64,000 nucleotides of DNA. Origin: Podarcis liolepis (lineage: Eukaryota). The stretch lies in the NCBI GenBank assembly GCA_965112155.1, contig OZ218099.1; one strand, 5' to 3'. Position 1 is the stretch's first letter, and every line of letters begins with the position of its first letter. This document shows positions 11,729 through 63,999 of the stretch, in pieces. The notes under the pieces were generated by a model that did not search any database, had not been told where the DNA came from, and saw nothing but the letters and a program-made list of their open reading frames with translations. Both the position numbers and the translations under genes were made by a program.

Positions 11729-12040
11729 GGTAAAGGAACCCCTGACTCTGGGGTTGCGACGCTCATCTTGCTTTATTGGCCGAGGGAGCCGGCGTACAAC
11801 TTCCGGGTCATGTGGCCAGCATGACTATGCTGCTTCTGGCGAACCAGAGCAGCGTTTACCTTCCTGCCAGAGCAGTACCTATTTATCTACTTGCACTTTG
11901 ACATGCTTTCGAACTGCTGGGTTGGCAGGAGCAGGGACCAAGCAACAGGAGCTCACCCCGTCGTGGGGATTCGAACCACCGACCTTCTGGTCAGCAGGTC
12001 CTAGGCTCTGTGGTTTAACCCACAGCACCACCCGCGTCCC
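11729..12040 (-). mobile_element. Sauria (Squam1) SINE, internally deleted
   Basis: GGGACGCGGGTGG 5' end, GGTTCGAATCCC B box, ACCTTT tail; 15-bp TSD TCTACTCAAAAGTAA (11714-11728 and 12042-12056). Confidence 0.9.
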
Positions 12041-12448
12041 TTCTACTCAAAAGTAATCCCCACTAAATTCAGTGGAACTTATTCCCAGTTAACTATGTAA
12101 AGGATTGTGGTCTCAGTGCATCACAATCAAGGCTATTCCCTCTTTCAGAAAGTTGCTATTTGAAACCATTAGAGGCAGGCAAATTTGATAAAGATTAAAA
12201 TAGGGATCAGGGGAACAAGGCTCTTAAAAGAATTGTAATATTAAGAGAAGAAAAATAAAGGTGGCATTAGTTTACCATAAATGAATGCTCAGAAACACTG
12301 TCTTGTGACTGTGATTATAGTCTCTCTGCTCACTACTTTTCAATTCTGCATGTGGATGTCTTTGTTCTCAAGAGGTCCAATAATACTGAGGCAAACGGAA
12401 GGGTGGCTCAGAAGCACGACAAAATGGGGTTTGTTTGCAGAGGGTATA

Positions 12449-31200: not shown

Positions 31201-34200
31201 TCAAATTAGATGTTTCTGGGTTGTTGTTGTGTTGTTGTTTTTAACAGTTTAAGAGCGGGTCCAGGGTGTTTATCTGTCATGAATCCAATTAGGATGCTGG
31301 TACTGGGGGAAAGCAAGGAGCTAACACCTAATGAAAACTGCCCCTTACTCATCCACTGAAGTGGATTTGCTGCCATATAGTACCTGTATGTCTTCATGAT
31401 GATAGAAACAGAATCTTGGAAATGAGTTATAATTGTGAAAATGGTGGAAGGAAAAGGAAACCCCCTTTCCTTTCTGCCAGGAAATGATAGAAACCCCACA
31501 CCAGCACCTCAGTTATTTCCACTGCACACTCCACAGTTGCCATTAAACTGTTAAAAAGGAGCTAGAGAGCTAATCATAGATCATGTCTAGCTGCACTCAT
31601 AGAATGCAAAAGGGTCATTCAGTGCAGCTGGGTGGGTGAATAAGCTGGAAAAATCTGGCACCAGTTCCATCTTGGAATCTAGGGAGAAAAGGGCCAAGGC
31701 AAATGTAGTGGTGCATGCATCCTTTCAAATGCCCCCCCCCCAATCTTTGATGGATTTTCAAGGCTCCCACAAATATGAGGCAAAGGACCACAAATAATGG
31801 CTATTTTGAATTCCCTTAAATTCCAAAGGGATGCCACCAGGCAGGAAAGGGAGATACACTAAGTTCACTGGACTTATGATTTACAGCCTGGGTTGAGAAG
31901 AACGGTATTACAGTACATGTAGGTAACAAAAGGCAGAGAGCTTTGTACATACATGCAAATGTCTACTGCTGACTGTAATCTCTTATTCTTATGTATCTAA
32001 CTTCTATGTAAAATCTACATAGATGGCGTAACGGAGACAAACAATTATTTTTTCCAGCCGACAAATCCAAGAACATAGCTGAAAAATACACCCAAACGTA
32101 CAGAACTTCTAAGGACAAAACTGATTCATAGTCATCCTTGAAGATAGGGAGTGAAGCAGCTCAATCTATAACTGGGAGGCCTGTTAAATGTAAATTACCA
32201 ACACAACTATACTCCAGTTAGTATTGTTGCTACATGACTTCCACCGGGCAGTGCAAGTCACTTCAATATAAGCTAGGCATCTTCAGATGCAGCGCTTGTT
32301 TCTGCTACTTTAGAAGCCAGTTAGTACAGTCAATAGCCTGGTGTTTGAGGAAGCTCAGATAAAGATGTGACAAAGAACATTCACTATATAGGGCCTCTAT
32401 TTTTATTTTTATATATATTGCCTGCTTCTGGGTTTAGTGATGGGTCAGCCCATTTTCTCATCACAAATGACACCCCATATGAGATTTATGATATTCACTT
32501 TCTTGTTAACAGGACAGCTGCTTGTAACTGGATTATGACTTCACAGCTGTAATGTACAGGAAAAAGGAAATCTTTACTGAAGCTCAAGAGTGACATAGCA
32601 ACTTCTGATGAACGTGGAAGACTTGTCCACTAAACTAAAACTTGTATAGGCTTAAAATTTCAAAGATGATGATGAAGTCTTCAAATGATACCCTTACAGG
32701 TCAAAGTCAAAATAAATCAAATCTGAAGGCAGATGTTCAAGCAGAAACAGCTATTATGAAATACAGTAGATATTCAGGCACAGTTTTGAGTTGCATGAGT
32801 ATAAGGACCAAAACTAGACATGACATTTAGTGATGTGCATCTTTCTCTATTTGTCTTAAAAATAAGATAAAATTCAGCACTAGTAGGTTGTGAATTGAAA
32901 GCAGAGAGGAAGGGGTGGCTTAGTCATTCCCCTGTCTGGCTCAGCCTTTCCCACAAGTTGAAAGAACAGCTGGAAGGGAGTGATTTTTTGGGTGGGAAAG
33001 CAGCCAGCAGAGAAGGTTTACATAGGGCTGTTCCCTGCTATTCTGCTGGTTAAACTTGTAGCCACCCAAGGCTGTTTATAGCTTAAAAACTAAATGCTTA
33101 GGGAACAAATACAATTGCAAATTATGTCAATTCTGGTCATGAGTACAGATGGCTTTCAGACTTGGGTATACTATAAAAACACAGAAGTTGAAGAGAAAGG
33201 AAGGGAAACAATAAAGGCAACATGATACATGGATATTACTCTACCTCCACTCTTGAGTAGATAGCGATTAACATCTTGTATGGTGGTGTTAATAGTTGGC
33301 CCTGTTGGAACACTTCCTGGTGTAACGTCAGGATCATTCTCAGGGTCAATGTTCTGCAATCCTTTCCATGGTACCCCAGGATGAAATTCTGTTTGGGCGA
33401 AAATAAGATGACATCACATTTCTTACCAAGATCCACATGCGTGGGAAAAGGTACCGCTGCACAGAAGATGAAACCAGGTACACAACTCTCTGGTGATGGA
33501 GTGGGCATTTTGATAAAAAGTTTAAGAAAAACATTTTATAAGGGAGGTTTGGATGGATGGATTTTGTTGTCCAAATTCAGTGCTAGTATCAGACAGGTAG
33601 GAAGTTTTATCCCAGTTCACACCAGGATAAAACATTTTATGTGCCTGTATGCCTCGACCAACAAAAGCGTGGCAAAATGTTCCTCATACTTTCATCTTAC
33701 GGAAGACTACAGCTGGAATGAGCTGAACTAGTATGTTAACATTTGGATACTGAAAGCATTGCCTCAGTAAAGGGGCTTGTATCACATTTCAGATACCTTC
33801 AAGCTCTAAAAGCTAGAATACATATTTTTTTTGTTACCTGGTGGCCAGTTGATACTGGAGCCATTGGAGATTTTATCACTATCAGATTTGGCACGTGACC
33901 AGCTGTGAGGAACGGCTACAGGAGGACTAGCTGGTGACTCGTTGTTTTGAATCAGATCATACCGGCCATAAGAGTCATCAATGGAGGACTTTCCTGGAGG
34001 ACCAATACTCAGACCTCCAGGGATAGCACCTAGAATAAAGAAGGTGGGATGACAGTACAAGATTATTAAGAGCATGGGTAACATTTGGCTCCTTCTCTTA
34101 TTGGTAGTCATTATAATTAGCAAAGCAAAGTATCACTCACACAACACATCTGTAACAGTGGCCAGTTAAGTGAAAGATAGCAGGTTAAACTGGGGCTGAA

Positions 34201-37200
34201 AGGTAGCTAACACAGTTCAAAAGTTATCTATCAAAGATTTGTGAGATTAAAGCTGCTACTGGGTGTAAATCTCACTGAACACACAGTGGGACCTGTTTCA
34301 AACAAACCTGCATGGGTCTGATTTGCTACTGATAAAACTGTCAAGTAAAGTTAAAACAAAAGGACTCTAATGAAAAATGTAAGATACACAACATGGTATT
34401 TTGCTGAGTGTCAGCAAAAGCATTTTGCTATATGGATCATTAAGATCCTTAAAAATCTTACCAATATACTCACAAAATATAAATGTTTTTAAAGAGCACA
34501 GTATTAGCTGTGAGTTTAGAAAATGGGAGTTTGAAACAAGAGCAGGGAGCTAAAACAGGTTTCTCTCAGTATTGGATTAAAATGTATAATGACACTAAGG
34601 GCAATACTGAATTTTCACTTCTGCTCTGCCTACAGTTGTAGTCTGCATTCAATTTACATTAATGTGATGAATTCCAAACACAGTTGGTAGGTATTTTGCA
34701 CTCTCTTTGGGGTGTGTTTTTTTGGAAACTGCTCACCTAAGTGAACCTCCGCCCCTGCCAACTTCTCTTAACATCTCATAAAGTTTAAGATTTAAGGATT
34801 CATGAGAAAAATATAACACATGTGTAATTTAATTTTCTAACTGTGCATTCTATGCTTACCTGTTTGGAGATTAAATCTGATTGAGTTCAGTGGGGCATAC
34901 TTCCCAGTAAATGGATATAAGACTAGCCTAAGCCACTCAAAAGTCGAGATGCTTGATGTTCTGGACTTTTCAAACTGATTTTCCCTTCTTGGTTTTTAGG
35001 CCATTAACATTTATTATGACCAATAATATGAGCAATGAAATCAGTATGAGCAGTAATATGTGTGTGGGGGTGTGGTGGGAATTACAAGAATAAGATATTT
35101 GCACATACAAATGTTCCATTGAGAAATTTATATTCTGTTAAGTACTTTGCAATGCCCATTGCTAACCTGGGGTGGGGGGAGAGAATACAGTGGTACCTCA
35201 GGTTACATATGCTTAAGGTTACAGACTCCGCTAACCCAGAAATAGTACCTCGGGTTAAGAACTTTGCTTCAGGATGAGAACAGAAATCGTGCTCCGGCAG
35301 TGCGGCGGAAGCAAGAGGCTCCATTAGCTAAAGTGGTGCTTCAGGTTAAGAACAGTTTCAGGTTAAGAACAGACCTCCAGAACGAATTAAGTACTTAACC
35401 CGAGGTACCAATGTATCGGAAAAACGTGGAATCTTGCAATTGGACTTGATGTATTTAGAACGATGACACATACCGTGCTTGCTAGGATTCTGGTCAAGTG
35501 GAGAAGCAGCACTGGAGAGATTATCCATTGAGTTGGGATGTGTCCACTGAGGAAGGCGAGATTGGGACTGAGAAGTGTCCTTCACTGACAAACCACCAGG
35601 AATGTCCATGCTGTTTACATTCATGTTTGGGTTCAGTCCAGCTAAGAGGAAGTAGGCAGGCTATTAAGAAACCCTTAATCCCCGATTCTTGGCATTTAAT
35701 CACACTTTACTTTAAGCTGAAATCACAAGCTAATCTTTTTACGTCTACAAGTAATGCAAACATGGGTTAAAGCAGCAAGGGCCCAAGAAGTAAATTGGGA
35801 GGGATAGTATATTACAACCACCAAGTATCTTACAACCACCTAAACTGGTACCTACCACTACATTTTCTGTAAGTTAATTTAAGACTTAAGTTATTTTGTT
35901 CTGTCAGTCCTAAACCTTCTACCATTCAGACTCATTCAGGGATCCTGGATTCTAATATTATACAAGATAAAAAGAGTAAAAGTGCTGCCTGAGTTTTGTT
36001 ATACTGATTTTATTCTCTGCTTCTGAAGTTTTTAACACTGTGCCATTTTTTGATGTTGTTATGGTTCAGTTTTAATGGTATTATTATTATTATTATTATT
36101 AGCTGCCAGAGAACTTTGTTTTTGGGTAGCATATTAATAAAGATAATAAGTAATTTGGACACAGTTGCCAAATTAGTTAAGAAGCAGAGGTATGCAGGAG
36201 AAAGGATTCCAGACTGAAGCAAGTTAAATCACTGTATGTATACATAATTAGGTAATTTACATCCTTCTGAACAGGTCCTTAAATAACTGCACATACCAAG
36301 GGGGTAAGGAGCAAAGGTGTTCGGTGAAGACTGTTGCTCTTTGGTCTGCAGGTCAGATAGGCCAGGAGCCTGGGGATGGGGTGAAAAGTTATCCATGGCT
36401 GATTTGCCTGCAGGGGGGTGCAAAGATAGATGTGGAGGGGGTGGCTGCTGCTTCATAAGCAGGGCCTGGGCCAGCTGGCGCTGGTGCTGCTGGATCTGCT
36501 GCTGCATGTTATTGATTGTACGTGCAACCTGGCAGCAAGGAAAAAATAAAACAAAGTAAGCAAATGCTAGATGGAACAAAGGTTTGTGGCACTTTATCTA
36601 GAACCACTCAGCAGACAGTGAATTCAATAGATTAGGAATTAGATGCATCCCAGACATGGTAAGAGAAACTGGTCTGTCAGCCCCGTGTGTGATTTATGTC
36701 TGCATTAAAGCGTGCAGCACAGTAGATTTCCTTCACAAATAAGCTTTTTCTTGTAACATGCTAGACTCTTTAGAGGCTTTACATTTGGAACTGGGTCAAC
36801 AAGTTGCACCTACTTGCTGCTCCTGTTGTCTGATGGGTCCGGAAACATTACGCTGAGCCTGTAACATCTGCTGCTGGATTTGTAAACGTTGGTACGCCTG
36901 CAAGTTGAGAAAAAAAAAGGTCTAAGGTCACAGTGTGAAGAAGCCCAATGGCCTCACTGCAACTGCATTAAATAACATATGAAACAAATGCATGTTCCCA
37001 AAGCCCTCCTTGCAGGAAGTAACAGACCCAGAGACAGAAGTCAGCTCAGATCAAGAGTGCAAACAATACATGGCCAATTAAAGCTATTTAAAACGTGATG
37101 AGGAAAAGGCATCATCAACTGAATGATTGTTCAAAGAAAATGTAAACACGGAGATGCAAATAGAGTGTTAGTAGCATGTGAGAGAACTAATCACAAAGGC

Positions 37201-40200
37201 CCAGGGTAGACAAAACATTTAATCAGGGTTCATGCTAATTCTGCTCTCTTAATCCTGGTTTAGAACTCAAGTTAACAGGAACACTGTGGTGCAGAGGTTG
37301 CCCACAAGGTGCTTGTTGAAGGTCTTAATAAATATCCCCTTTTAAAACCCCTCAGACTCTTTGCCTTTCTTGTTCAATTCTGTCTGCATGACTCCACCTC
37401 TCCTACACTGAGCATGCCCCCTTAAACATGCCCACATCTCACTGGGTGCCAAGTTGCTCTCTGTGAGCAAGTGTAGCGGTGGCTGATGTATGTACTTTCC
37501 CCCCTTTGATGGGGTGGCTACTGGGAGAGGGGAATGCCACACCATTCTGTCTCCTTTTCCTCTCTTTTTCCTTGGTAGCAAGGTATGTCATGCCCCCACT
37601 CCCGCAGTTATTTGGTATTATGCTACATCTCCACAGCAGCCATTTTGTGTTAGGGCCTGTCCTCCTGGCAGCCATTTTGTGACTGACATCCCTAGCACTT
37701 TCTCAAAATTCCAAGTGTGTCTACTTGCCCAAAAAGATTAGAGAACCTTTAGCTTGTCAAACTAAGCCCTGGAGCACACATACATTGAGATGATACCAGT
37801 GGAATTCATCTGTTGCCTACCTGAAACCCTCTATACAGTCATACCTCATGTTATGTCTGCTTCATGTTACGTTCTTTCAGGTTACGTCCTGTGGCAACCG
37901 CGACAAAGGGTTATTTCCGGGTTTCACCACTTGTGCATGTGCAGAAGTGCAAAATGACGTAATGCGCAGAAGCAGCGAATTGCAACCCGTGAATGCGCAG
38001 ACGCGCCACTGTGGGCTGCGCACTTTTCATGTTGCAAATGGGCCTCTGGAACGGATCCCGTTTGCAACCAGAGGTACCACTGTACTATGGTTCAAACCAT
38101 ACATTCACACCTGGTCTCTGGCTAGGGCTTAAGCTTATTTAAGGTATTTATACCACTGTTGTTATGTCTGTACATACTTCTGTATGCTCACAAAACTGAA
38201 ATAAAAAGAAGTTCTATATTTATAACATGGGGCAGTTTTCTCAAAACCTAAGACTAGTTGTTGCCATTGGGTACATTGAATTCTACACTGGTATCTTAAT
38301 ATCTGGAAGACTGGGTCCTAGAAAAATTTGGTTTGCAATAACTTTGAAAGGTTTGCAATAAAATACATGCATATTAAGGGCATGACTGATTGCACAAATG
38401 AATGGAAATAATGCTCCATTGCATCTACTGGTGAAGAAGTATTGCAGAACATCAATTTTATTAGATTAGCATACAATACAAAAACAACAACACAGGAATC
38501 TATCAGAAATATTGTAGAATTTTGAGTAATAGTAGTGGTACCAGAGGTTGTTTTTGAGGTTACAGTCCTATACATGTGTTTCAAAAGTTAAGTTTAGAAC
38601 AATCCAATGGTAATGAGCAAAGTATTTAGTCTTTATCATACTGGAAGTATCAAGCAACTTTTAAGATTCAGGTAGGTATATAAATTCATTTTCAGAACCA
38701 AGTCTAATCATCATTTCTGAAGTGAACATGCCCATTCATGTGGCTTTAAATGCAAGATTTTCTTTCTGGATTTATAGCTTTCTCACTGTGNNNNNNNNNN
38801 NNNNNNNNNNNNNNNNNNNNNNNNNNNNNNNNNNNNNNNNNNNNNNNNNNNNNNNNNNNNNNNNNNNNNNNNNNNNNNNNNNNNNNNNNNNNNNNNNNNN
38901 NNNNNNNNNNNNNNNNNNNNNNNNNNNNNNNNNNNNNNGTAAGAGGTGAATATTCATTACTACAGTGGTTAGTAATGACCTTAGTTACAGGTCTGAACTC
39001 CTTGCAGAGTTGAAACAAGACAATTCCAAAGAAAGTGGTTTTTAGGTTACTTGCTGTGATTTTTGTTTAATAGAAAGCTATGTGTAGAAGTTGAAAGCAA
39101 GCACAACATATCACAGCAAAATAAACCTTCATTCCAGAATTGCTCATCCTTTCTGAACCTGACACATAAAATATAAATACTTGAGAGTTGTATCCAACCA
39201 ACTCATTGTATGTGTCTAACAACTTCTGCAAGTGCCACACAAATTCCTCTCCCTCTTCTCCCCCCAGAACGGCTCCAGAGGGTTGAGGGAACTCCCACGG
39301 CAGATTTGGGGTGTGCGCAGGGGCAGGAAAGGGAGAGGAAGTTCCACCCTGTTCACAAAAGTCATTCCACACATGCAATGATTTAGTAGGGTACAACCTG
39401 AGTCACTAATAACTTTCCCACAACATGCTATTTTTTGTAATTCAAATAAACTGGCATGGCAAATTAAAAACTCTGTGGCATTTCTCTATACATGGTGCCT
39501 TTCACAGAAGTATATTGTGTAAGTGTTGTGGTGTCAATATTTTATGTTGCATTATTCCAACTGGCACTATCAGCCATCTCTAGGTGCAGATAACTTTAAG
39601 AATATATTATTTTTTTCTTCCATTTAAGTGTTCCACTCAATATGCATTAGTTATGGCACAGAAATGGCCATCGCCAGGGATACAACCATTTTTGCAAAAC
39701 TGAGGAGCCGGTGAGGAGGAGAAACCTGCCTCCTGACCTTACCGACAACCCAAGTGCTAACCGCTAGGCCCTTGTTTTCCAACTGCCAGTGGTTAACGAC
39801 ACCTGGGTTTGCATCCCTGGCTATCACTAATGCTACAGAGCTCAATCTAACCTGAGGGGAGAGAAACTGAGGCACTTGAGCACGAAGACTAGGCTGGGAT
39901 GAGTTAAGAGGTTGCACTGGCGGTTGCTGCGGCTGTTGCATGGTCCTGGCTTGTGCTGCTCCGCTATTGCCAAACATACCCAGATTGCCACTCGGTATCT
40001 GTGGGATGACAAGGTTAGAAGATTTAAGTTTCACAATTTTATAGCTTGTGACAGTCACTGTAGACTAGCTCAAGACATTAGCAAACAAAGGAGCTCTCAT
40101 GCAGATTAGCAGCAGGTGAAGCCTTTAAAGCAGTGATGGCTAAACCTGGCCCTCCAGCTGTTTGGGGACTACAATTCCCATCATCCCTGACCACTGGTCC

Positions 40201-54500: not shown

Positions 54501-57500
54501 GCTTCCCTGGGTTCTCTTTAAATTCAATAATAATGATTAATCACTACCAATCTGTAATGTATAAGCCATTTTGTTAAATACATTGTGTTTTGAGCCACAC
54601 AATGTTATGTAAATTACTACGCACAACAAGGGAGTTCATGCCCTGGTAAATTACATGTAATTACATGAAAACAATAACATGTGTTAAGACACCCATAGTT
54701 TGTAAAGTTCTCAAGAGATCAAATCAAGTGCAAAAAATTGCAGTGTTGAATATGACGGCAGTTAGTTAGAAAAATCTTTAAACAGTAACTTGGGTATTGC
54801 TGACGTTTGAATCCCTGAAACAATTCAAACTCCACTGGGGGTTTCAGAACGGTTATGTGTATTTGCATTTCTTAAGTAACACACTCTCTTTCACACACTA
54901 CCTTCAATCCAATGAAGCATATTACTAATGATATTTCATAGGCTCACAGGATCAGATAGCTGGGTCTCTTTAGAAGTACTGCATTGGAGGGTGATAGTGG
55001 GAGATCTCCACTGGGGATGAATTTCAGCATGATATTTCTTCTGATTTTTTAAATACCCCAGTCATTTGTGTGTCATCCCTCAAAATAAACTGACTCACTA
55101 CTGGTAGAAGGCATTCCTTGATGACCCAGACAAAGAACTGTTCCATAACATTAACCTGCTTTTCCAAACATTAAGGTAAAGGTAAAGGTACCCCTGCCCG
55201 TACGGGCCAGTCGTGTCCGACTCTAGGGTTGTGCGCCCATCTCACTTAAGAGGCCGGGAGCCAGCGCTGTCTGGAGACACTTCCGGGTCACGTGGCCAGC
55301 GTGACAAAGCTGCTCTGGTGAGCCAGCACCAGCGCAGCGCACGGAAACGCCGTTTACCTTCCCGCTAGAAAGCGGTACCTATTTATCTACTTTCACTTTA
55401 GGGGTGCTTTCGAACTGCTAGGTGGGCAGGAGCTGGGACCGCAGACGGGAGCTCACCCTGCCGCGGGGATTCGAACCGCCGACCATGCGATCGGCAAGTC
55501 CTAGGCGTTGAGGATTTACCCACAGCGCCACCCGCGTCCCGTTCCCAACATTAAGGCAGACTTATTTTTAAAAGGGCTACAGCTGTCTGGTTGATGATAG
55601 GGTAACATACTTTATTTCAGCAGAAGCCTACATGTTGCCTTCCAGGTGTTGCTGGACTACAACTCCCATCATCCCTGACACTGGCCATGCTGCTTGTGGC
55701 TGATGGGAATTCTGAGTCCAAAAACATATGGAAGGCCATATGTTAGCCACCACTGCTTTATTTCATTGTAGCTAGAAAGTCAACAAGTAACTGATTTATT
55801 GGAATTCAACAGTCCCAATTTTAAGAATCCTGGAATTGTAGAGTTGGAAGGGACTCCTGAGGGTCATCTAGTCTCAACTAAAGCATCCATGACAGATGGG
55901 CATCCAATCTCTGCTTAAAAACTTCCAAGGAAGGAGTGCCCACTAGCTATGAATTCCCCTCATGACCTGGGACAAGCAACAATGTTTACACTTTAGATAC
56001 CTATGACTAAAATAAAGGTATGTGGGTGCTTTTGGATCTAGATGTATAACTAAAGGTGGATAATATACTTCATAATTTTGTTTACATCCCACGGATACAC
56101 TGTAATTGAATTGTAAGAAGATATAATAGAAGGGGAAAGCTCATCCAGCAAGGGGCAGCGAGAAGTAATTTGGCACTCACCTCTCACTTTGTTATGTCTG
56201 CACTATTGCTGAAAATAAGCCAGAGAAATGGCTTTCTTATCTTACAGTACCTCACCAGGACAACATCCTTACTAGAGGAACACTTCAAAGCACAGAGGAA
56301 ACAGAGGATAGACAAAGGGAATAAATCATCGGGTAGACAAAAACATCAGTAAATGAAGGGTTTTGTGCTGTCATCTTATTTGCTGGAACTGTTTATGTTG
56401 TCTGTCCAGCCCAGCTAGGATAGAAAGCCAAAGTGGCATTAATCCAGGTTTTTACTTTTCTATGCACATATAGCTCAGGGACGCGGGTGGGGCTGTGGGT
56501 AAAACCTCAGTGCCTAGGACTTGCCGATCGTATGGTCGGCGGTTCGAATCCCCGCGGCAGGGTGAGCTCCCGTCTTTCGGTCCCAGCTCCTGCCCACCTA
56601 GCAGTTTGAAAGCACCCCTAAGTGCAAGTAGATAAATAGGTACCGCTTTATAGCGGGAAGGTAACGGTGTTTCCGTGCGCTGCGCTGCTGCTGGCTCGCC
56701 AGAGCAGCTTCGTCACACTGGCCACGTGACCCGGAAGTGTCTCCGGACAGCGCTGGCTCCCAGCCTCTTAAGTGAGATGAGCGCACAACCCTAGAGTCGG
56801 ACACGACTGGCCCGTACGGGCAGGGGTACCTTTACCTTTACGCACATATAGGCTTCATTTGTTACCATGCAGGGTGCAAACTTCCATTTCAAATGTGGCT
56901 ATATAATGTCTCAATAAAGATTTATGATTCTATACATGCTTTAGGGGACAAAAGGATAACTTAGGTCTATATATTTTAAGTTAGTTTGCTGTGTTTTAAT
57001 ATCTTTTTACATTATCTAGAACAGTGTTTCCCAACCGGTGTTCCGCGGCACACTAGTGTGCCGCGAGACGTTGGCTGGTGTGCCGTGGGAGGGAGGCGGG
57101 CGAGTCGGGCGGCGAGAGGCGGGGCGGCGGCGAGGATCCGCATCGAGCCGGGGGCGGCTCCGCGGTGGTGGTGCCGAGGTTTCTCTCTCCATTCTCCCCT
57201 CACACACACACACACAGGAAATAACACAGGATCAGCTGACAGGACCCGGCCAATGGGGCGGCGGCGGGGCAGCGCGCGCAAAAGGGAGGAGCGCGAGACA
57301 GCGGATGAGGAGGAGGCCGGCATGTCCGGGCAGCAGCAGCAACAACAGCAGCAGCAACTCCCGGCGACGGCTCCTCAAGCCCCGGGCAACCCTACTCCCT
57401 CACCGGCCTTGGCCGCCCTCCTGCTCCACCCGCCGCCGCCTCCCCCGCCGCCGCCGGCCACCTCGGCCCCGCCGCCGCCCCCTCCTCTGCCCGCTATCGC

Positions 57501-59276
57501 CGCCACCACCACAACAGCCGCCGCCGCCTTAGCTGCCGCCGTCCCTCAGTCCCTCGCTTTGCTGCCTCCTCCCCCCCACCCCCAAAGCTTGGAGGTTCCC
57601 CGGCAAGGGGGAGGGGAAAAAATTGAAACTTTCACTTTCGTGCGTCCCTCCCGGCGTGACGCTGCGCGCTGACGTCACGGGGCTGTAATGGTGGTGTGCC
57701 TCGAGATTTTTTTCATCAAACAAGTGTGCCTTTGCCCCAAAAAGGTTGGGAAACACTGATCTAGAAAGAAGGCTGCTACTACGAAATAGTAGCCCCACAC
57801 AATGAACTATGAAAGACCACAGAAATATTTAATTCTGTCAATGAGAAATTTAAAATATCTTACATAAACAGCCTTTTTCTAGTGCAACTCTTGTAGCTTA
57901 CCACATAAATAGATTCTATTAGTCACTGGGGGCATTTAGATGACTCAAAGTTATAGATTTTCATGTCTTATTAAGGTCACCACATTACATTACTAGAGTT
58001 TTAAGTTACATTCAAATTGTGTTGTGTTTTCATGCTAGTTTCCCCAAACGGGAAGTACTGCTGAACTCAGCTGCACAATTCATTAGGAGCTGGCACTGAA
58101 ATAATGTTGTGGAGGAGAGGTGTAATCTCTTGTCCTTCACCATGCAGATAATCTGCCATCTGAAGTGTGGCTTCCCTGTAAACTCCTGGTCACACAGAAG
58201 CCTGTCCATGTGATCATCTCTCCCTCTGGGAGAAGAGGCGTTTGTGTGGATGACCCTGCTCACATGGGTAGTTTTCTACATAGTGGAGGTGAGGGGCTTG
58301 TATTGGGACCAAATCAACAGCAAGAATAGGGACTACTCCAAACACATATTGCAGATGAGCCTGAAAATATCAGCTTTCCTTTAAAAGAAAGCAAAAAGGT
58401 TTCTAGGCTATGTGGCTAGAAAGGCCTGTAAATATAACTGCACTAGGTAGTTGTGAGGAAAGCTTTAGGCATCTTTTGGATTCAGTCAGAGAGAAAGGGA
58501 AAACTCATACCTTAGCCCTTCTTTGTAGCTACCATTTATCTCCCTGTTACATACTGCTTTCTAGCCACCCAAGCTGCCTGTCTCTTCTGCCTTGCTCATG
58601 AAAAGACCCTTTTTTCTAAGCAGGAGACTGCTTATGCACCAGTAGAGCAAATCCACCCCTCCTGTCAATACATCCACACTGTATTGAGCTCCACACCAGC
58701 TCGCCCTGTCCCACAAGATAAGTGGCAGTGACACACCTGCTGGGAAGCTAGCATTGCAGCTTTGCCCCACTGGGTGAGTCGCTACTGCTGGTATATTACT
58801 ATACAACTTGTAACAAATGCTGCTGTTATTGATCCAGAAAATCATTGATTTAGAATATCTGGATAGCCTTGTCCAAGTCCCTCATGCTTATGTAAACTCA
58901 GCAGTCTGCACACAGTAAATGTACAGGAGAGTCACTTTGTGGATGCAATTTAGGGTAGTGGGTAAGAGTCATAGCTACCATTTCATTCAGCCATATACCA
59001 TCGTTTCATTTATGGTTGAAAACTGAAAACATCAAACAGTGTTTTCATGGATAAATTCAACTGCTGATCCCTAAATATATGGAACTGAGATTGCAGCTGT
59101 ACCAGTTGCTGGCACTTCTGTGACTCGGGCTACTCTCATCTCTGTATCAACTCTGCCTTCTATACTGGCTCATGGGAGAGGGCTGGCCAGTATTTGGGGC
59201 TACAGGATTGTGACATATCCCACATAAGAACACCCTGCACACAAGGGTCTGGACTGCTCAGTCCCCGGGGGCATTG

Positions 59277-59327
<51 letters not shown>

Positions 59328-62300
59328 TGCATTTAGGGGGAATGAAAGTAGGAGGATCTTAATGAAATCTACAAATCCCACCCCTCTGACTGTCCCCAAA
59401 TTTAGATCTATTATGACCCCCCTCCACACAATGCATTTTACAGGGTGATTCCTTTAAAAGAGGCCCTGTGGATGCAGGGTACACATGTTCCACGGGGCCT
59501 CTTTAAAAGACTCACCCTGTAGAACAGCAGCGGATGTGGTTAGCACAAAGGACAAGGGGACAGGATACTTCTGCCCCTGTAAGGCCCCACATCAGGGCAG
59601 ACTGTCACAGCTGTTCCATCATGGTTCACAGCTGCTTGCCCACATGTGAAGCTTCCAGGGCACTTGGTAGGGGTTGAATCATGCCCACTTTGTAGAGATG
59701 TCCATATCCCACTAAAGGTTTGAATATTCATTTTTAATGCTGAAGTAACAGGTGCTTTAAAATCTTCCTACCCAAGCTTGATGATCTGTCACTACTTATG
59801 AGCTTGAGTACAGGTAGCTCATCTACCTTCATGTGACTATAAATTTAGTAAAGTCAGGAAAACTCAGGATTCTAGAGATAGAACTGATTATACGAAACCC
59901 TACCAAATCTGGTCAAAGGGTTACAAAATTTCTAGGGGCATGAGATCCAAGTACATAAGACATTCAGACTGGATAAAATCTCCTCCAAAAATATTTTCTT
60001 AAACATTATCAAGTGAAATAGAGAAAATGGCACAAAGACATAAAAATTGGGGGGGGGAGCATTAATGATTAGGAGCTGCATTCATCTGGTAGTGGTAAGT
60101 TAAAACTTGAGGACTGGCTAAAAGTACAAGGATTGTCAAAGGTTTTCTTCACTGCTGCAAAAAACTGGAAGTTTTTAAATACCAGGACAACACAAACTAC
60201 AGCTAATTATTTTGTTCAGCAAAAAATAAAAAGTAAACACAGAGTTTTCTATTTCTTAAGACAAAAATCTCTTTGTATGAGATAATGAATAAAAATCACT
60301 GGTTCAACAACTAAGCAGCCTCTTGGGTAACAGCCACAATTGCAGAAATGTGTCTTTGGCAGGAGACAGCCAGAGTAACAGAAACAGATGGATAGTGTCG
60401 GAGAATGCACATCAAAGAGGGACAAACAGCAACAGAGCAAAGAAAGTAAATTCAAAAACATGATGAAATTATATCTTACCATATAATATTTTTGTAAGAA
60501 AAAAGTCATGCTGCAGTTTGTGTGGCTGCCAATAGGTGGCCATGAGTACTGCAGCGACAACAGCAGGCAGAGCAAGTGAGCAGAGCAGACAGGCTGGCAG
60601 CACGAGTGAGCGAGCTGGCAGAGCAAAACAGCAGGTGGGTTACCCTGGAAGGCCTTCCCATGTTGTCTGCAGCCACTGCCACCTGGGAAGCCTGGGGTTT
60701 GAACAAGCAGGCAGGCCGTCCAGCAGAGTGAGCATGCACCCTGGCAGACCGTCATGTGCTCCCTGTCTTTGCTGCTGCTGCCCAATGTTTGCCAAAAACT
60801 CCCCCCTCTCCTCACAACTTGCCTCAAACCACTGCAGTGTGAGGCAAAGGGGAGAAAGACTTTCTCCTCTTCATTCCCCTGTCGTCTGCGAGTGGCAGCA
60901 GGATCTTGGGATGGGGCAAGCTGTGAGGGTATGGGGGTGTTTTGGGAGATAGGGATCTGCAATTGAGTTGGCAACAGTTAGACAGATTAAATGAGGTGTG
61001 AGGGGATGGGGAGCTATGAGTGGAAGAAGGGGATTGGCAAAGGGATTGGGGGAGATGGCAAGCAATGTGAGCCACAGCAACGCTCCCTAATGAAGATGAT
61101 ATTGTCAGATATGTCCTATGAAGGGATAGTGATCTGACAAGCATGTGCAGATGAACTGACAACCATTATGTCCCATAGAATTGCCAGATTATGGCTTTAA
61201 ACACACCTACTTGGCTAGGTATATTTTAAAACAAGGTATTAGTATCACTAGCCAATTACCAAAATCATTTCATAATCTGATAATTCTTTATACCTTTTCG
61301 ATTTCTCTCTCCATCCTTAGTAAAACAATTATTATCGTAACCACAATTTCAAAAGAAAGATGATCCACAGACTGATCTAATGTCATGCTGTCTGCATCTT
61401 CTATCCTTTTGCATATCATTTCTCCTATTTTCATCTGGTCACCCTAAATTTTAATAGCAATGAGTATTTTGGACACCTTTTTACACCTTATTCGTATTAA
61501 ATACAAACTTATCCTTAAGGCAGGAAGTATAGCTTGAATATAAACAAATAATGCCTACATCACACTTATTAAAGTTTCTTTCCAAAAGGTAGCATACTTA
61601 TTTTGAGAAAACAAAAGCTGTATCATACCTGGACCAAGCAGCGGGGACCGGTTTGACTGGGCACTTGACTGGTGCGGTGGCTGAGGTTCAGCCATGTTTG
61701 CGTTGATAATGGTGGTGCTAGTGGTGGCGGTTGTGGTACTGCTCTGGATTACCGGATTGTTTCTATCCCACATGTTTACAGTCTTGTTGTTATTGTAATT
61801 TGGGTCACCCCAAGCTGAGGTACCATCATCAATCTCCATCTTGCGCCGAATGGATGGTGGAGAGGGCTCTTCCCACCCCGTTGCTTCACTACTATCTTTC
61901 TGTTTGGCTGGCACTGGTCCACCAACCCATCCTGATCCAGTCTGTTTAACAGAAGCAGCTCCTCCCCAATTACTCACGTTGTTGTCCTGGGATTTAGAAG
62001 CCCAATTCTGTTGAGGACCAGGTTTTAAAGATTCCCCCCAGCTCGTACCTGTATTAGCCTTGCTGTTTGTGCCATTTCCCCATCCAGTGGTCCCAGAACG
62101 CGTAGTATCATTCCAGCCAGACCCTGCTCTATTGTCAGCATCCCATCCAGAACCATTCTTTTTCCCATCTCCCAAGTGTCCAGGGACAGATGAGGAATCA
62201 ACCCAATCTCCACCCCCTGAAGTCCAGCCTGGATTCGATTTCTGTCCATCTCCCCAGTTTTGAGATTTGGGTTTCTGAGGTTCACCCCAAGTAGGCGACT

Positions 62301-63999
62301 TGTCCTCCTGATTTGTGGTCCCACTCCAAGTGTGGCCACTTTTGGCAGCAGCAGCATTATTGACAGCAGTAGAACTTGCTGGCTCTCCCCATCCCCCTGG
62401 GCCATTTGGCGCTTTGTTATTGTTGTCGCCCCAACCTGTATTAGTTGGAACTGTTGCAGGTGGAGAGCTGACCCACCCAGATACTGAAGAGGTATTTGTA
62501 CTGTTCATGATGGACCCATCATTCTTGCCCCCCGAGTTTGAAGGCTGAGTAGCTGCACAACCCCAGGCCTCCGTTCCATTGTCATTCTTTCGTTCAGACC
62601 TTGGGGATTCTTCAAATTCCCAGGCAGTGTTTTGTTTTACAGGAGTCTGTCCCCATCCAGTGTTGGACAGAACCCTTGGGTCAAGGTCATTCCTTGGCAA
62701 CTGGACTTGTCCTTGGTCTAGCATTCCCTTGTCTCTTCTTCGAGCCTCTCCAGTTCCTTCCCTCCCAGTACTGCCTTCATTCTGACTCCCATTGCTATCA
62801 TTACTGCCTTCACTACCTGTGTTGCCAGATGCTGCAGCTTTGGCCCAAGAGTTTATTTGTTCATTGCCCTGCTGCATGGCAGGATTCTGGCTGGTAACAC
62901 TAGAGCTATCCCACCCTGTTGATCCTTTCCCATTGATGTCATTACTGGAATGCTGGTTTGGGGGCTTGCTCCATTCACCATTAACGCCATTACTGGTGCT
63001 GCGGCTTGGGTGGCCCCAAGCACCAGAATGCATATTACCAACACCACTGTTGCCACTGCCCCTGCCCCATGCTAAGATCCCAGGACCAGCAGGAGGCCCC
63101 GAATCCCATGCACTTGTTCCGTTCCCTTCCTTTTGTACAGCACTGCTGGATCCATTTTGTTTAGCACTTAATGCTGAGTTCACAGTGTCTCCATTCCCCT
63201 GACTGAACCCAGAATTGCTGTTTCCTGTGGCAGGATTACCTGGGGATATCCCCCACACTGAATTGCCCATTCCTTCACCACTTCCCCCACTGACTTGAGA
63301 AACTGATGTCCCATTAGCACCAGGAAGGCTTTGCAGGTGGGGCGGGATGATGGCCCCCATGCCAACAGCCATGCCCCAGTTCGGCAGTCCATTTGTCTGC
63401 ATTGCATTGATAGGGTTTGGTGAAGAGTTCATNNNNNNNNNNNNNNNNNNNNNNNNNNNNNNNNNNNNNNNNNNNNNNNNNNNNNNNNNNNNNNNNNNNN
63501 NNNNNNNNNNNNNNNNNNNNNNNNNNNNNNNNNNNNNNNNNNNNNNNNNNNNNNNNNNNNNNNNNNNNNNNNTCCCATTCTGGTTGCCCATGTTCTGACC
63601 TATGGCACTGACTGGACTGCAAATACTGGAAGGGTTGCCTGCTCCCACAGTTCCTTCATGTCCGAGTACAGGCCAGGCAGCTGGATTGGCATTTGGATTA
63701 AGGTTAAGATTAATGCCAGCATTTGAGTTGGAAGCACCCCAGCAATTTTGACTTCTACCATCTCCAATCATGTTGTCCATCTTTCCATCCCCACCACTGG
63801 CAGAGCAATGAGCTAAGCCAGAGTTGGAACCTGTGGCAACACCCCACACTCTGGCTGAATTTCCATTACCATTTGCTCCACCAGCTCCAAGGGCACTCTG
63901 GTTAGAAGTGCTTTGGATGAGTGCTCCATTGGTGCCATTATTGCCATTGGGTTTCTTTGTATGTCCAGTGAAGTTGCCTTGGGCACTCCCTGTAGCCAT
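15879..63999 (-). CDS. TNRC6C: Trinucleotide repeat-containing 6C (GW182 family, AGO-binding miRNA silencing scaffold); spliced CDS span, ~1717 aa including one inferred 120-nt exon
   Basis: Exon translations match recalled vertebrate TNRC6C from [16 protein letters not shown] to [12 protein letters not shown]. All visible introns have GT-AG ends with compatible phases. GW repeats, UBA, Q-rich region, PAM2 and RRM appear in the expected order. Confidence 0.97.
17672..17811 (-). CDS. TNRC6C: TNRC6C RRM exon ([23 protein letters not shown]...KSLHM)
   Basis: aattag acceptor, AT|GTATGC donor; 140 nt. Confidence 0.94.
19658..19728 (-). CDS. TNRC6C: TNRC6C exon, start of RRM ([23 protein letters not shown])
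   Basis: gtatag acceptor, CAG|GTAAGC donor; 71 nt. Confidence 0.93.
21055..21180 (-). mobile_element. CR1-like LINE 3' end fragment
   Basis: cataagaa...ctgctggatcaggccaa...catctagtccagcatcctgttctc pattern. Confidence 0.55.
22203..22397 (-). CDS. TNRC6C: TNRC6C exon ([10 protein letters not shown]...ELWKVP...SYSS)
   Basis: ttgcag acceptor, G|GTATTC donor; 195 nt. Confidence 0.93.
24396..24536. repeat. ~140-nt near-perfect inverted repeat
   Basis: GGCTACCTGAGCACAGGTCTGCATGAATGTAAATGA pairs with TCATTTACATTCATGCAGACCTGTGCTCATGTAGCC. Confidence 0.9.
26587..26703 (-). CDS. TNRC6C: TNRC6C probable cassette exon ([23 protein letters not shown]...APSIA)
   Basis: ctgcag acceptor, G|GTACGA donor; 117 nt, symmetric phase 1-1. 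Confidence 0.88.
33245..33388 (-). CDS. TNRC6C: TNRC6C exon ([12 protein letters not shown]... second half of PAM2 ...LLKSG)
   Basis: aaacag acceptor, G|GTAGAG donor; 144 nt. Confidence 0.93.
33838..34029 (-). CDS. TNRC6C: TNRC6C exon (GAIPGG...SSINWPP; first half of PAM2)
   Basis: ttctag acceptor, G|GTAACA donor; 192 nt. Confidence 0.93.
35188..35413. mobile_element. Tc1/mariner(pogo)-type MITE
   Basis: TA|CAGTGGTACCTC...GAGGTACCAATG|TA; same family as the 41419 copy. Confidence 0.82.
35474..35641 (-). CDS. TNRC6C: TNRC6C exon with CCR4-NOT-interacting motif QSRLPQW
   Basis: cctcttag acceptor, G|GTATGT donor; 168 nt. Confidence 0.93.
36079..36100. repeat. (TAT)n microsatellite
   Basis: Direct reading. 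Confidence 0.9.
36297..36528 (-). CDS. TNRC6C: TNRC6C Q-rich exon (VARTINNMQ...FAPYPL)
   Basis: tgccag acceptor, G|GTATGT donor; 232 nt. Confidence 0.93.
36814..36897 (-). CDS. TNRC6C: TNRC6C Q-rich exon ([10 protein letters not shown]...RQQEQQ)
   Basis: cttgcag acceptor, CAA|GTAGGT donor; 84 nt. Confidence 0.93.
37836..38082. mobile_element. Tc1/mariner(pogo)-type MITE
   Basis: TA|CAGTCATACCTC...GAGGTACCACTG|TA. Confidence 0.75.
38791..38938. other. 148-nt N-run, probably hiding the ~120-nt TNRC6C Q-rich exon (VQAQLLQFAAK...QLYQLQL)
   Basis: This exon, expected from recalled orthologues, is not found elsewhere between its neighbours. A minus-strand pyrimidine tract (ttcacctcttac) runs directly into the gap. 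Confidence 0.75.
39852..39998 (-). CDS. TNRC6C: TNRC6C exon (IPSGNLG...QFLSPQ)
   Basis: cccacag acceptor, CAG|GTTAGA donor; 147 nt. Confidence 0.93.
40131..40268. mobile_element. Short palindromic hAT-type MITE
   Basis: CAGTGATGGC...GCCACCACTG; near-perfect 8-bp TSD ctttaaag/gtttaaag; GACTACAA-TCCCATCA hairpin body. Confidence 0.8.
41070..41410 (+). mobile_element. CR1-like LINE 3' fragment, degenerate
   Basis: ...[11 protein letters not shown]-like ORF2 end followed by a CR1-like 3'UTR. Confidence 0.55.
41419..41898. mobile_element. Tc1/mariner(pogo)-type MITE interrupted by a SINE
   Basis: TA|CAGTGGTACCTC ... GAGGTACCA[SINE]TACCACTG|TA. Confidence 0.8.
41655..41890 (+). mobile_element. 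Squam3-type tRNA-derived SINE nested in a MITE TIR
   Basis: CCAGTGTGGTGTAGTGGTTAAGAG head, GGGTTCGCG B box, ...ATCAAATCCAAAACTC end; TACCA duplicated on both sides. Confidence 0.8.
42556..42705 (-). CDS. TNRC6C: TNRC6C exon (DGGLVEEP...NLNSSRQ); alternative in-frame acceptor at 42729
   Basis: caatcag acceptor, CAG|GTAAGG donor; 150 nt. Confidence 0.92.
44966..45007. repeat. (TA)n microsatellite
   Basis: Direct reading. Confidence 0.95.
45286..45421. mobile_element. Short palindromic hAT-type MITE
   Basis: CAGGCATAGGCA...TGCCTATGCCTG; TSD gataagaa/gacaagaa. Confidence 0.85.
45478..45510. repeat. (TG)n microsatellite
   Basis: Direct reading. Confidence 0.95.
48201..48346 (-). CDS. TNRC6C: TNRC6C exon (SALLEKKV...RPTFLDK)
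   Basis: tttttgcag acceptor, AAG|GTAGGT donor; 146 nt. Confidence 0.93.
48624..48681 (-). CDS. TNRC6C: TNRC6C exon, UBA ([19 protein letters not shown])
   Basis: tttttacag acceptor, A|GTAAGT donor; 58 nt. Confidence 0.93.
49119..49199 (-). CDS. TNRC6C: TNRC6C exon, start of UBA ([27 protein letters not shown])
   Basis: ttctcag acceptor, CCA|GTGAGT donor; 81 nt. Confidence 0.93.
49440..49570. mobile_element. Degenerate copy of the same palindromic hAT-type MITE (further copies near 5560-5690, 16650-16755, 47435-47560, 47820-47958, 51838-51937, 55620-55755)
   Basis: Shared CCCTCCAGATGTT...ACATCTGGAGGG inverted arms. Confidence 0.7.
50438..50607 (-). CDS. TNRC6C: TNRC6C exon ([10 protein letters not shown]...KKGLQK)
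   Basis: ctacag acceptor, AAG|GTAAGA donor; 170 nt. Confidence 0.93.
51227..51433 (-). CDS. TNRC6C: TNRC6C exon (GWGEMP...[11 protein letters not shown]...LCKP)
   Basis: CAGCAG acceptor (alternative start 51436), donor G|GTAAGT; 207 nt, phase 1-1. Confidence 0.9.
51530..51567. repeat. (TACA)n microsatellite
   Basis: Direct reading. Confidence 0.95.
55173..55540 (-). mobile_element. Sauria (Squam1) SINE, full length
   Basis: tRNA-like head, (ACCTTT)n tail, TSD-like AACATTAAGG flanks. Confidence 0.92.
56478..56840 (+). mobile_element. Sauria (Squam1) SINE, full length
   Basis: GGGACGCGGGTGG...GGTTCGAATCCC...ACCTTTACCTTTA; TSD-like GCACATATAG flanks. Confidence 0.92.
57022..57758. mobile_element. 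Non-autonomous hAT (Charlie-like) DNA transposon with GC-rich captured cargo
   Basis: Perfect 15-bp TIR CAGTGTTTCCCAACC...GGTTGGGAAACACTG; perfect 8-bp TSD ATCTAGAA (57014-57021 and 57759-57766); subterminal GTGTGCC motifs at both ends. Confidence 0.92.
57240..57545 (+). pseudogene. RANBP9: Captured RANBP9-like 5' fragment (CCAAT, 5'UTR, ATG at 57322, N-terminal Q/P-rich coding part) inside the hAT element
   Basis: [13 protein letters not shown]...[25 protein letters not shown] resembles the recalled RANBP9 N-terminus [13 protein letters not shown]...[23 protein letters not shown]. The sequence is low complexity, so the match needs alignment. Confidence 0.6.
59279..59318. repeat. (GT)n microsatellite
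   Basis: Direct reading. Confidence 0.95.
59441..59519. mobile_element. 79-bp mariner-like mini-MITE (hairpin)
   Basis: TA|CAGGGTGA...TCACCCTG|TA, ~32-bp inverted arms. Confidence 0.7.
61629..63999 (-). CDS. TNRC6C: TNRC6C large exon: GW-repeat AGO-binding region (exon probably begins beyond the window edge)
   Basis: [10 protein letters not shown]...[10 protein letters not shown]...SPLLGP; donor CCAG|GTATGA at 61628; contains a 140-nt N-run. Confidence 0.95.
63433..63572. other. 140-nt N-run inside the TNRC6C large exon, frame-preserving
   Basis: 47 masked codons between ...NQNG and MNSSPNP. Confidence 0.9.

What the first reader, a model, noticed from the sequence alone, without database searches (positions are those of the whole stretch)
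57022..57758. Pack-hAT: a young DNA transposon carrying a captured host CpG-island/first-exon fragment, apparently from RANBP9
Seen: a 737-bp element with perfect 15-bp TIRs and a perfect ATCTAGAA TSD, no transposase, and an extremely GC/CpG-rich interior inside an AT-rich intron. The interior has a CCAAT (57250-57254), then GAGGAGGAGGCCGGC-ATG (57322), then [55 protein letters not shown]. Knowledge: nTCTAGAn is the Charlie-group hAT target preference. From memory, the RANBP9 (RanBPM, CTLH complex) N-terminus has the same ordered signature MSGQ / polyQ-L / [22 protein letters not shown]. Gene-fragment capture by TIR elements is common in plants (Pack-MULEs) and much less documented in vertebrates. 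Inference: a lizard hAT family captured the 5' end of RANBP9 and moved it into TNRC6C. Intact CpGs, TIRs and TSD indicate a recent event.
Basis: partly seen in the sequence, partly recalled or inferred. Interest (0 to 1): 0.9.

Follow-up and report, generated by a model that had tools for sequence, protein, structure and literature searches.

The report
Lizard hAT transposon carrying RANBP9 exon-1 fragment
A 737-bp non-autonomous hAT DNA transposon, sitting antisense in an intron of a TNRC6 (GW182) gene of a squamate, carries the start of the host gene RANBP9, so it is a clean vertebrate example of a "Pack" transposon, a kind already described in animals.

Summary
Window 57022-57758 is a 737-bp element with perfect 15-bp inverted ends (CAGTGTTTCCCAACC) and a perfect 8-bp target duplication (ATCTAGAA). 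It has clustered GTGTGCC subterminal motifs and no transposase domain. GC is 68% and CpG o/e 0.86, against 0.24 for the window.

Ends and target match Charlie-like hAT families of Anolis. The internal ORF (57322-57672) matches native squamate RANBP9 exon 1 (P0003/P0005, named through PDB 7nsc_A, E 1e-41) from the start codon to about codon 68. The match is far above composition-preserving shuffles (z 18.6) and then stops; the native exon runs on into the SPRY region.

The last ~38 codons recur in a Podarcis muralis model (A0A670K811), there behind a PRKAR2A-type RIIa fragment. So the 3' part is probably transposon backbone that meets different first-exon fragments.

Not shown:
- whether the promoter-like 57085-57321 also comes from RANBP9 (its only homologue, P0004, has other flanks);
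- whether the composite transposed or formed in place;

Pack-hATs are documented in vertebrates (Tan et al. 2021), so this is a new member of a known kind. The host is a TNRC6-family gene; paralogue C was not tested.

The parts
57014..57021 (.). left copy of the 8-bp target-site duplication ATCTAGAA
   Evidence: Read directly. It is identical to 57759-57766 and fits the NTCTAGAN target of Charlie-like Anolis hATs.
57022..57036 (+). 5' terminal inverted repeat CAGTGTTTCCCAACC
   Evidence: A 0-mismatch pair with 57744-57758. It starts with the hAT terminal motif YARNG.
57037..57084 (+). 5' subterminal hAT region with a perfect 22-nt palindrome (57044-57065) and GGCACAC/GTGTGCC motifs at 57047, 57056 and 57078
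   Evidence: CpG o/e is 0.95 over 57022-57084.
57085..57321 (+). segment B: CpG-rich promoter-like DNA of unresolved origin. GC boxes at 57121, 57151 and 57255; (CA)8 at 57201-57216; CCAAT at 57250-57254
   Evidence: Motifs. Positions 57133-57300 are homologous to P0004 (HMMER E 6.4e-7). P0004 has unrelated sequence on both sides.
57322..57540 (+). segment C: captured 5' part of RANBP9 coding exon 1, from the start codon to about codon 68; homology fades between 57516 and 57540
   Evidence: Matches the native exon-1 ORFs P0003 and P0005 (E 1.3e-10; tblastn 78% over 69 aa; shuffle z 18.6). P0003 is RANBP9 by PDB 7nsc_A, E 1.1e-41.
57322..57672 (+). 116-aa chimeric ORF (RANBP9 N-terminus plus transposon-derived tail), with no known domain
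57541..57672 (+). segment D: internal 3' region shared with the Podarcis muralis model A0A670K811 (P0002), most likely transposon backbone. It ends in the palindrome TGACGTCA at 57670-57677
   Evidence: P0002 shares two blocks with it, 17/20 and 20/23 identical. In P0002 these blocks follow a PRKAR2A-type RIIa fragment.
57673..57743 (+). 3' subterminal hAT region with GTGTGCC motifs at 57694 and 57724
57744..57758 (-). 3' terminal inverted repeat (reverse complement of the 5' TIR)
57759..57766 (.). right copy of the 8-bp target-site duplication ATCTAGAA

Best explanation
The element is a non-autonomous hAT transposon of the Charlie-like group that has picked up host DNA, that is, a Pack-hAT.

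Shown here:
- 15-bp TIRs, an 8-bp TSD on the preferred TCTAGA target, and repeated GTGTGCC subterminal motifs. By analogy with other hATs these motifs are likely transposase binding sites, but that role is inferred.
- An interior of about 455 bp of CpG-island-like DNA. Its downstream ~220 bp is the beginning of RANBP9 coding exon 1, from the ATG to about codon 68.
- A following ~220 bp up to the 3' TIR that recurs behind a different first-exon fragment (PRKAR2A type) in Podarcis muralis.

Inferred:
- That 3' part is transposon backbone.
- The host DNA entered the transposon by template switching during repair or replication of a break inside a hAT copy. These are the gap-filling and FoSTeST routes of Tan et al. 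2021.
- The composite was then cut and pasted in trans by a hAT transposase into an intron of a TNRC6-family gene, antisense to it.
- The insertion is recent or kept unmethylated, because CpGs are undecayed even in the transposon ends.
- The 116-aa ORF holds only the disordered, low-complexity N-terminus of RANBP9 with no SPRY, LisH, CTLH or CRA domain. It is most likely non-functional as a protein.
- Any effect on the host would come from planting a CpG-island or promoter-like block antisense in the intron.
For: - TIR and TSD are perfect and unique in the window.
- The TIR differs at one of its 15 positions from the first 15 of Anolis hAT-N3_AC (CAGTGGTTCCCAACCT) and resembles hAT-HT3 (CAGTGRTTCCCAAA). 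The TSD fits NTCTAGAN and the terminus fits YARNG (PMC3014272).
- Half of the window's GTGTGCC motifs lie in the two subterminal regions.
- The same 22-nt terminus occurs at hAT-like ends in unrelated AT-rich contigs, one of them a 276-bp MITE.
- No Pfam domain in any ORF.
- RANBP9: P0003 and P0005 are native exon-1 ORFs. They run on into the conserved stretch that starts LNEQEKEL and reaches the SPRY region, and they match human RANBP9 in PDB 7nsc_A at E 1.1e-41, with RANBP10 scoring lower. The element's ORF matches them at E 1.3e-10 in 5.8 billion sequences, at 78% identity over 69 aa, and at z 18.6 against 5000 composition-preserving shuffles, none of which reached the score.
- Backbone: P0002 shares the tail (E 1.4e-5 in 1.8 billion) behind RIIa residues 3-41, best PDB hits PRKAR2A.
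- No other RANBP9 exon lies in the 64-kb window. The parent is therefore distal, which in Tan et al. is the pattern of transposed multicopy Pack-TIRs rather than of in-place gap filling.
- CpG o/e is 0.95 in the 5' transposon end and 0.6 in the 3' end, against 0.24 for the window.
Against: - No nucleotide comparison with the native RANBP9 locus of the same genome was possible, so breakpoints and identity are unknown.
- BLASTP with compositional adjustment gives no significant score for the ORF against P0003 (E 8.8). A direct search of the ORF against PDB sequences did not pick up human RANBP9. Significance therefore rests on HMMER and on my shuffle test.
- No insert-free copy of the same hAT family was seen. 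The 'backbone' status of 57541-57672 rests on one gene model whose DNA I could not read.
- Segment B's only homologue (P0004) does not continue into RANBP9, so a RANBP9 promoter origin is not shown.
- No second copy with a different TSD was demonstrated, so transposition of the composite is inferred.
Confidence: 0.8

Rival explanations
1. In-place gap filling. A plain hAT MITE was already resident in the TNRC6 intron. A break inside it was repaired by copying RANBP9 (and perhaps other) DNA, and the composite never transposed.
For: Tan et al. 2021 find this to be the main route for single-copy animal Pack-TIRs. No second copy with another TSD was shown here. The exact ORFs of the element are not in the protein collection.
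Against: That route shows a strong bias to parents within 15 kb, and no other RANBP9 exon is in the window. The transposon ends are as CpG-intact as the insert, and the TIR and TSD are perfect, so the host element is not an old relic. The same 3' part sits behind another gene fragment in Podarcis.
Confidence: 0.25
2. Mosaic capture. The interior was assembled from more than one locus. Only 57322-57540 is RANBP9, and 57085-57321 comes from another CpG-island promoter (the P0004 locus). Segment D could also be captured DNA rather than backbone.
For: P0004 matches 57133-57300 (E 6.4e-7). Upstream it diverges where the hAT end begins, and downstream it diverges about 20 nt before the RANBP9 ATG. 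No RANBP9 exon-1 ORF was returned from a contig of P0004's length (2394 bp). The contig lengths differ: 2394 bp against 2182, 1159 and 1751 bp. Multi-fragment inserts are common in plant Pack-MULEs (my own knowledge).
Against: P0004 is a frame-dependent ORF call on a short Logan contig of unknown species. Its divergence lies next to CAG and GC-rich repeats, where short-read contigs can misjoin. Segments B and C form one uninterrupted CpG island with a CCAAT box 70 nt upstream of the ATG, as expected of a native TATA-less promoter plus first exon.
Confidence: 0.3
3. Chance resemblance of low-complexity sequence: poly-Q and poly-P runs in GC-rich transposon DNA that merely look like RANBP9.
For: Composition-adjusted BLASTP gives E 8.8. 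The ORF gives no PDB hit to RANBP9.
Against: - None of 5000 shuffles reaches the observed score (z 18.6).
- The non-repeat stretch is 19/24 identical (z 12.5).
- The same order is kept: MSGQ, a Q run, a 24-aa spacer, nine P, ATSA, a P run, and a T run.
- HMMER gives E 1.3e-10.
Confidence: 0.02

Closest known systems
Pack-hAT-N8_XT of Xenopus tropicalis, and animal Pack-TIRs in general (Tan et al. 2021, PMC8277862)
   Same: A non-autonomous hAT with TIRs and an 8-bp TSD whose interior holds a few hundred bp copied from the 5' end of a host gene (there 291 bp of the CAPSL 5' UTR). The parent is distal and the element lacks a transposase.
   Different: The capture here includes the start codon and about 68 codons of a coding exon with CpG-island character, and the host is a squamate. 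That survey found 0 Pack-TIRs in its only lizard, anoCar2. Multicopy status and an insert-free consensus element are shown there but not here.
Charlie-like non-autonomous hAT families of Anolis carolinensis: hAT-N3_AC and hAT-HT3 / hAT-HT3N1-N3 (Novick et al. 2011, PMC3014272)
   Same: TIR of 14-16 bp starting CAGTG and continuing TTCCCAA; 8-bp TSD NTCTAGAN; length 300-800 bp; no ORF.
   Different: One TIR position differs (T for G at position 6). Internal sequences could not be compared because no repeat library was available. Those families are not reported to carry host gene fragments.
Pack-MULEs of rice and other plants
   Same: A TIR transposon carrying gene fragments. The capture here is a GC-rich 5' end of a gene, which recalls the known GC-rich and 5' bias of Pack-MULE acquisition (my own knowledge, not tested here). 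It also creates a chimeric ORF.
   Different: A different superfamily: Mutator, with 9-10-bp TSDs and long TIRs. Pack-MULEs number in the thousands per genome and are plant elements.
Ssk-FB4 of Drosophila melanogaster (Tan et al. 2021)
   Same: A promoter plus coding region of a host gene lies inside a TIR element and was moved to distal sites.
   Different: Ssk-FB4 carries a nearly complete gene and makes a protein. Here only a disordered N-terminal fragment is carried.

Membership tests
hAT superfamily, non-autonomous element (Charlie-like group) | 8-bp target-site duplication | tested here: met
   ATCTAGAA on both sides, 8/8 identical.
hAT superfamily, non-autonomous element (Charlie-like group) | Short TIRs (about 10-25 bp) beginning with YARNG | tested here: met
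   Perfect 15-bp TIR starting CAGTG. The criterion is from PMC3014272.
hAT superfamily, non-autonomous element (Charlie-like group) | Target preference nTCTAGAn, as in Charlie-like families | tested here: met
   The TSD is ATCTAGAA. The Anolis Charlie-like families have NTCTAGAN.
hAT superfamily, non-autonomous element (Charlie-like group) | Subterminal short repeats at both ends | tested here: met
   Five GTGTGCC/GGCACAC motifs within about 65 nt of the ends, out of 10 in the 64-kb window.
hAT superfamily, non-autonomous element (Charlie-like group) | An autonomous partner with the same ends that encodes a hAT transposase | not testable with these tools
   No squamate genome or repeat library was available. 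None is in the window, and the element's own ORFs have no Pfam domain.
Pack-TIR / Pack-hAT | The sequence between the transposon ends is homologous to a host gene that exists elsewhere without the TIRs | tested here: met
   At protein level, in a related species. Native RANBP9 exon-1 ORFs P0003 and P0005 continue into the SPRY region, which the element lacks. The parent in the same genome was not seen.
Pack-TIR / Pack-hAT | Nucleotide-level parental copy and defined breakpoints in the same genome | not testable with these tools
Pack-TIR / Pack-hAT | The transposon backbone is identifiable apart from the captured insert | tested here: inconclusive
   The 3' internal part recurs behind a PRKAR2A-type fragment in P0002. 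No insert-free copy was found, and a search with P0002 residues 39-138 found only P0002 itself.
Pack-TIR / Pack-hAT | Multicopy, with distinct TSDs (transposition of the composite) | not testable with these tools
   P0001 may be a second copy (first 29 aa identical), but its DNA and flanks are unavailable.
RANBP9 (functional gene or paralogue) | SPRY, LisH, CTLH and CRA domains | tested here: not met
   The 116-aa ORF has no Pfam domain. Its homology to the native exon stops at about codon 68. It is a fragment, not a gene copy.

The most novel reading that the evidence does not exclude
One young hAT family of lacertid-type lizards repeatedly picks up the CpG-island first exons of housekeeping genes: RANBP9 here, and a PRKAR2A-type RIIa exon in Podarcis muralis A0A670K811. 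It then spreads them as start-codon-bearing, promoter-like cassettes. This would be a vertebrate counterpart of the 5'/GC-biased, multi-capture Pack-MULE families, able to seed antisense promoters and chimeric ORFs.
Probability: 0.3. Interest if true: 0.7.

Novelty: new member of a known kind. Interest (0 to 1): 0.5.

Why it matters
Gene-fragment capture by cut-and-paste transposons is a major source of exon shuffling in plants. In vertebrates it is known mostly from degraded, single-copy cases formed in place.

This copy is unusually clean. It has perfect ends, a perfect target duplication, undecayed CpGs and a start-codon-bearing first-exon fragment from a distal gene. That makes it a good handle for asking three questions in a squamate genome where hATs may still be active:
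- How does capture happen (breakpoints, microhomology)?
- Does one family capture repeatedly?
- Does a transplanted CpG island stay unmethylated and fire antisense inside a host gene, here a miRNA-silencing factor?

If it proves to be only a single ordinary Pack-hAT, it adds one well-defined squamate example to a known catalogue.

Tried and rejected
1. A direct PDB sequence search with the 116-aa ORF found no RANBP9, only a weak protocadherin hit. Low complexity defeats it, so I reached RANBP9 through the native exon ORF P0003 instead.
2. BLASTP with compositional adjustment, ORF against P0003, gave E 8.8. I replaced it with a composition-preserving shuffle test.
No DNA of the relatives could be read, and I did not try to get round this.
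4. The full-library HMMER search returned only two hits, P0001 and P0002.
5. The three word-index searches added only P0003 and P0004 and nothing for P0002's tail. Full-length RANBP9 models lie outside the length window of those searches.
6. Exact look-up showed that none of the element's own ORFs is in the collection.
7. A metagenome scan for the TIR plus 7 nt found ten contigs that share only the first 23-49 nt. A viral scan found none.
8. blastn of the element against the rest of the window found no other copy.
9. I looked for P0001's and P0004's non-matching parts in all frames of the element and found nothing convincing.
10. Rejected readings:
   - Retrocopy: the element has no poly-A, contains upstream non-transcribed-looking DNA, and has a TIR and TSD.
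   - Assembly artefact: the TIR and TSD are perfect.
   - RANBP9 N-terminus derived from the transposon: the motif is conserved in human RANBP9.
Full report
**Observation.**
- CAGTGTTTCCCAACC at 57022-57036 and its reverse complement at 57744-57758 are the only perfect matches in the window.
- ATCTAGAA flanks both sides, at 57014-57021 and 57759-57766.
- The 737 bp have 67.6% GC and 72 CpG, o/e 0.86. The window has 42% GC and o/e 0.24.
- CCAAT is at 57250 and ATG at 57322. A 116-aa ORF ends at 57672.
- By my analytic estimate, a perfect 15-bp inverted repeat with a perfect 8-bp flanking duplication is expected about 2e-6 times per window.

**The ends are hAT ends.**
- Novick et al. (PMC3014272) define lizard hATs by 8-bp TSDs and YARNG termini.
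- They list Charlie-like families with TIRs CAGTGGTTCCCAACCT (hAT-N3_AC) and CAGTGRTTCCCAAA (hAT-HT3), and TSD NTCTAGAN. The present TIR differs at one of its 15 positions from the first 15 of hAT-N3_AC, and the TSD fits.
- Five of the window's ten GTGTGCC/GGCACAC motifs lie within about 65 nt of the two ends. A perfect 22-nt palindrome lies at 57044-57065.
- The 22-nt terminus also occurs at hAT-like ends in ten AT-rich metagenome contigs, one of which holds a 276-bp MITE. Similarity there stops after 23-49 nt.
- No ORF of the element has a Pfam domain. It is a non-autonomous hAT.

**The interior holds RANBP9 exon 1.**
- A full HMMER scan and two word-index searches with the ORF returned four relatives.
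- P0003 (153 aa) and its cluster mate P0005 (318 aa) are ORF calls on short Logan contigs. They begin MSGQ and carry the same Q-run, spacer, nine P, ATSA and P-run. They then run on into the conserved stretch starting LNEQEKEL, as far as RVHYKG.
- P0003 matches human RANBP9 (PDB 7nsc_A) at E 1.1e-41 and RANBP10 less well. These are native RANBP9 first exons of a squamate.
- The element's ORF aligns with them from residue 1 to about 68: 78% over 69 aa by tblastn, and HMMER E 1.3e-10.
- Composition-adjusted BLASTP is not significant, so I ran 5000 composition-preserving shuffles. The observed score was 276; the shuffles had mean 86 and maximum 141 (z 18.6). The non-repetitive 24-aa spacer alone is 19/24 identical (z 12.5).
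- The native exon continues for another ~80 codons that the element lacks, so the element carries a truncated 5' fragment.
- The motif is conserved in human RANBP9, so the direction of transfer is gene to transposon.

**Backbone.**
- Residues 75-116 of the ORF (57544-57669) recur in two blocks, 17/20 and 20/23 identical, in P0002. P0002 is UniRef A0A670K811 of Podarcis muralis.
- P0002's first 41 residues are a RIIa dimerisation domain, truncated at profile position 32 of 38. Its best PDB matches are PRKAR2A. Full-length RII-alpha chains match nothing beyond residue 41.
- Two unrelated, truncated first-exon fragments thus sit upstream of the same sequence. The simplest reading is that 57541-57758 is the 3' part of the transposon and that the family has met host first exons more than once.
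- This rests on one gene model whose DNA I could not read. A search with its tail found only the model itself.

**Open points.**
- Segment B (57085-57321) holds GC boxes, a (CA)8 run and the CCAAT box. Its one homologue is P0004, matching 57133-57300 at E 6.4e-7.
  - P0004 differs upstream where the hAT end begins, and downstream about 20 nt before the ATG. It shows no RANBP9 start.
  - B may be the RANBP9 promoter, with P0004 diverged or misjoined. It may be a second captured locus, or it may be backbone.
- P0001 is identical to the ORF over its first 29 residues.
  - It keeps the native Ser at position 30. The element has Leu (TTG) there, which would fit a TCG-to-TTG CpG transition, assuming a TCG codon in the native sequence that I could not read.
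  - It then has shorter P runs and an unrelated tail.
  - It may be a second copy, the native locus of a close species, or a misjoined contig.

**Context.**
- Exons were searched one at a time, by reference, and I built no joined model.
  - The ORFs at 39651-40058 and 36229-36579 (minus strand) hit the GW182 M domain.
  - The ORFs at 33806-34123 and 22096-22416 (minus strand) hit TNRC6-PABC_bdg.
  - A GW-rich ORF at 61555-63999 starts with Met.
- The element lies in the intron after that large exon, with its ORF antisense to the host.
- The family is TNRC6/GW182. Paralogue C agrees with my memory of the N-terminus but was not tested.
- A tRNA-derived SINE with its own TSD lies 176 bp upstream (56470-56845). 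It has two more copies in the window, which fits a squamate genome.
- The two N runs were left as they are.
- I took no fetched contig for human.

**Age.**
- Forty-six error-free TIR and TSD positions bound divergence only loosely, below about 6.5% at 95%.
- The stronger sign is that CpG o/e is about 0.95 even in the 5' transposon end. Either the insertion is a few million years old at most, or the whole block is kept unmethylated. That is inference.

**Mechanism and rivals.**
- Tan et al. (PMC8277862) describe two routes. One is in-place gap filling of resident TEs, with parents mostly within 15 kb. The other is template switching followed by transposition, with distal parents and multicopy families.
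- Three things favour the second route, at roughly 0.6 to 0.25:
  - the parent is not in the window;
  - the transposon ends are as fresh as the insert;
  - the tail recurs with another gene fragment.
- Chance low-complexity resemblance is rejected.

**Novelty.**
- Pack-hATs are catalogued in vertebrates: 208 of 370 animal Pack-TIRs, including a 5'-UTR capture by hAT-N8_XT.
- That survey found none in its only lizard, and I found no squamate report.
- This is a new, very clean member of a known kind. The more novel reading is a repeatedly capturing family.

**Limits.**
- Full-length RANBP9 models were outside the length window of the protein searches.

Noticed in passing
window 61555-63999, 39651-40058, 36229-36579, 33806-34123, 22096-22416 (all minus strand): Exons of a GW182/TNRC6-family gene. 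There is a large GW-rich first coding exon starting with Met at 63999, two exons with M_domain hits and two with TNRC6-PABC_bdg hits (Pfam). The Pack-hAT lies in the intron after the first coding exon, antisense to the gene. Which paralogue (A, B or C) was not determined.
   Followed up: partly
window 56470-56845 (+), 55176-55540 (-), 11744-12041 (-): Three copies of a tRNA-derived SINE, at 100%, 94.5% and 75% identity to the first. The first is flanked by the direct repeat GCACATATAG and lies 176 bp upstream of the hAT. It accounts for the other GC-rich, CpG-rich patches near the element.
   Followed up: partly
P0002 (UniRef A0A670K811, Podarcis muralis): An annotated 138-aa 'RIIa domain-containing protein'. 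It is a chimera of the first ~41 residues of a PRKAR2A-type subunit and sequence shared with the 3' interior of this transposon. It is probably another Pack-hAT, or a gene model that reads into one.
   Followed up: partly
window 2778-3752 (+): An uninterrupted 324-aa ORF with a full Ras-family GTPase domain (Pfam Ras, E 2.9e-37). It lies downstream of the last TNRC6 exons, on the opposite strand, and is a likely single-exon small-GTPase gene.
   Followed up: no
L001-L010 (JGI metagenome contigs); L010 991-1266: hAT-like ends with the identical first 15-22 nt (CAGTGTTTCCCAAC and onward) in AT-rich contigs of unrelated, probably invertebrate, origin. L010 holds a complete 276-bp MITE with GGTTCCG subterminal repeats. 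This suggests a widely distributed hAT lineage with a conserved terminus.
   Followed up: partly
window 38791-38938 and 63433-63572: Two runs of N, 148 and 140 bases. The second interrupts the large GW-rich exon.
   Followed up: no
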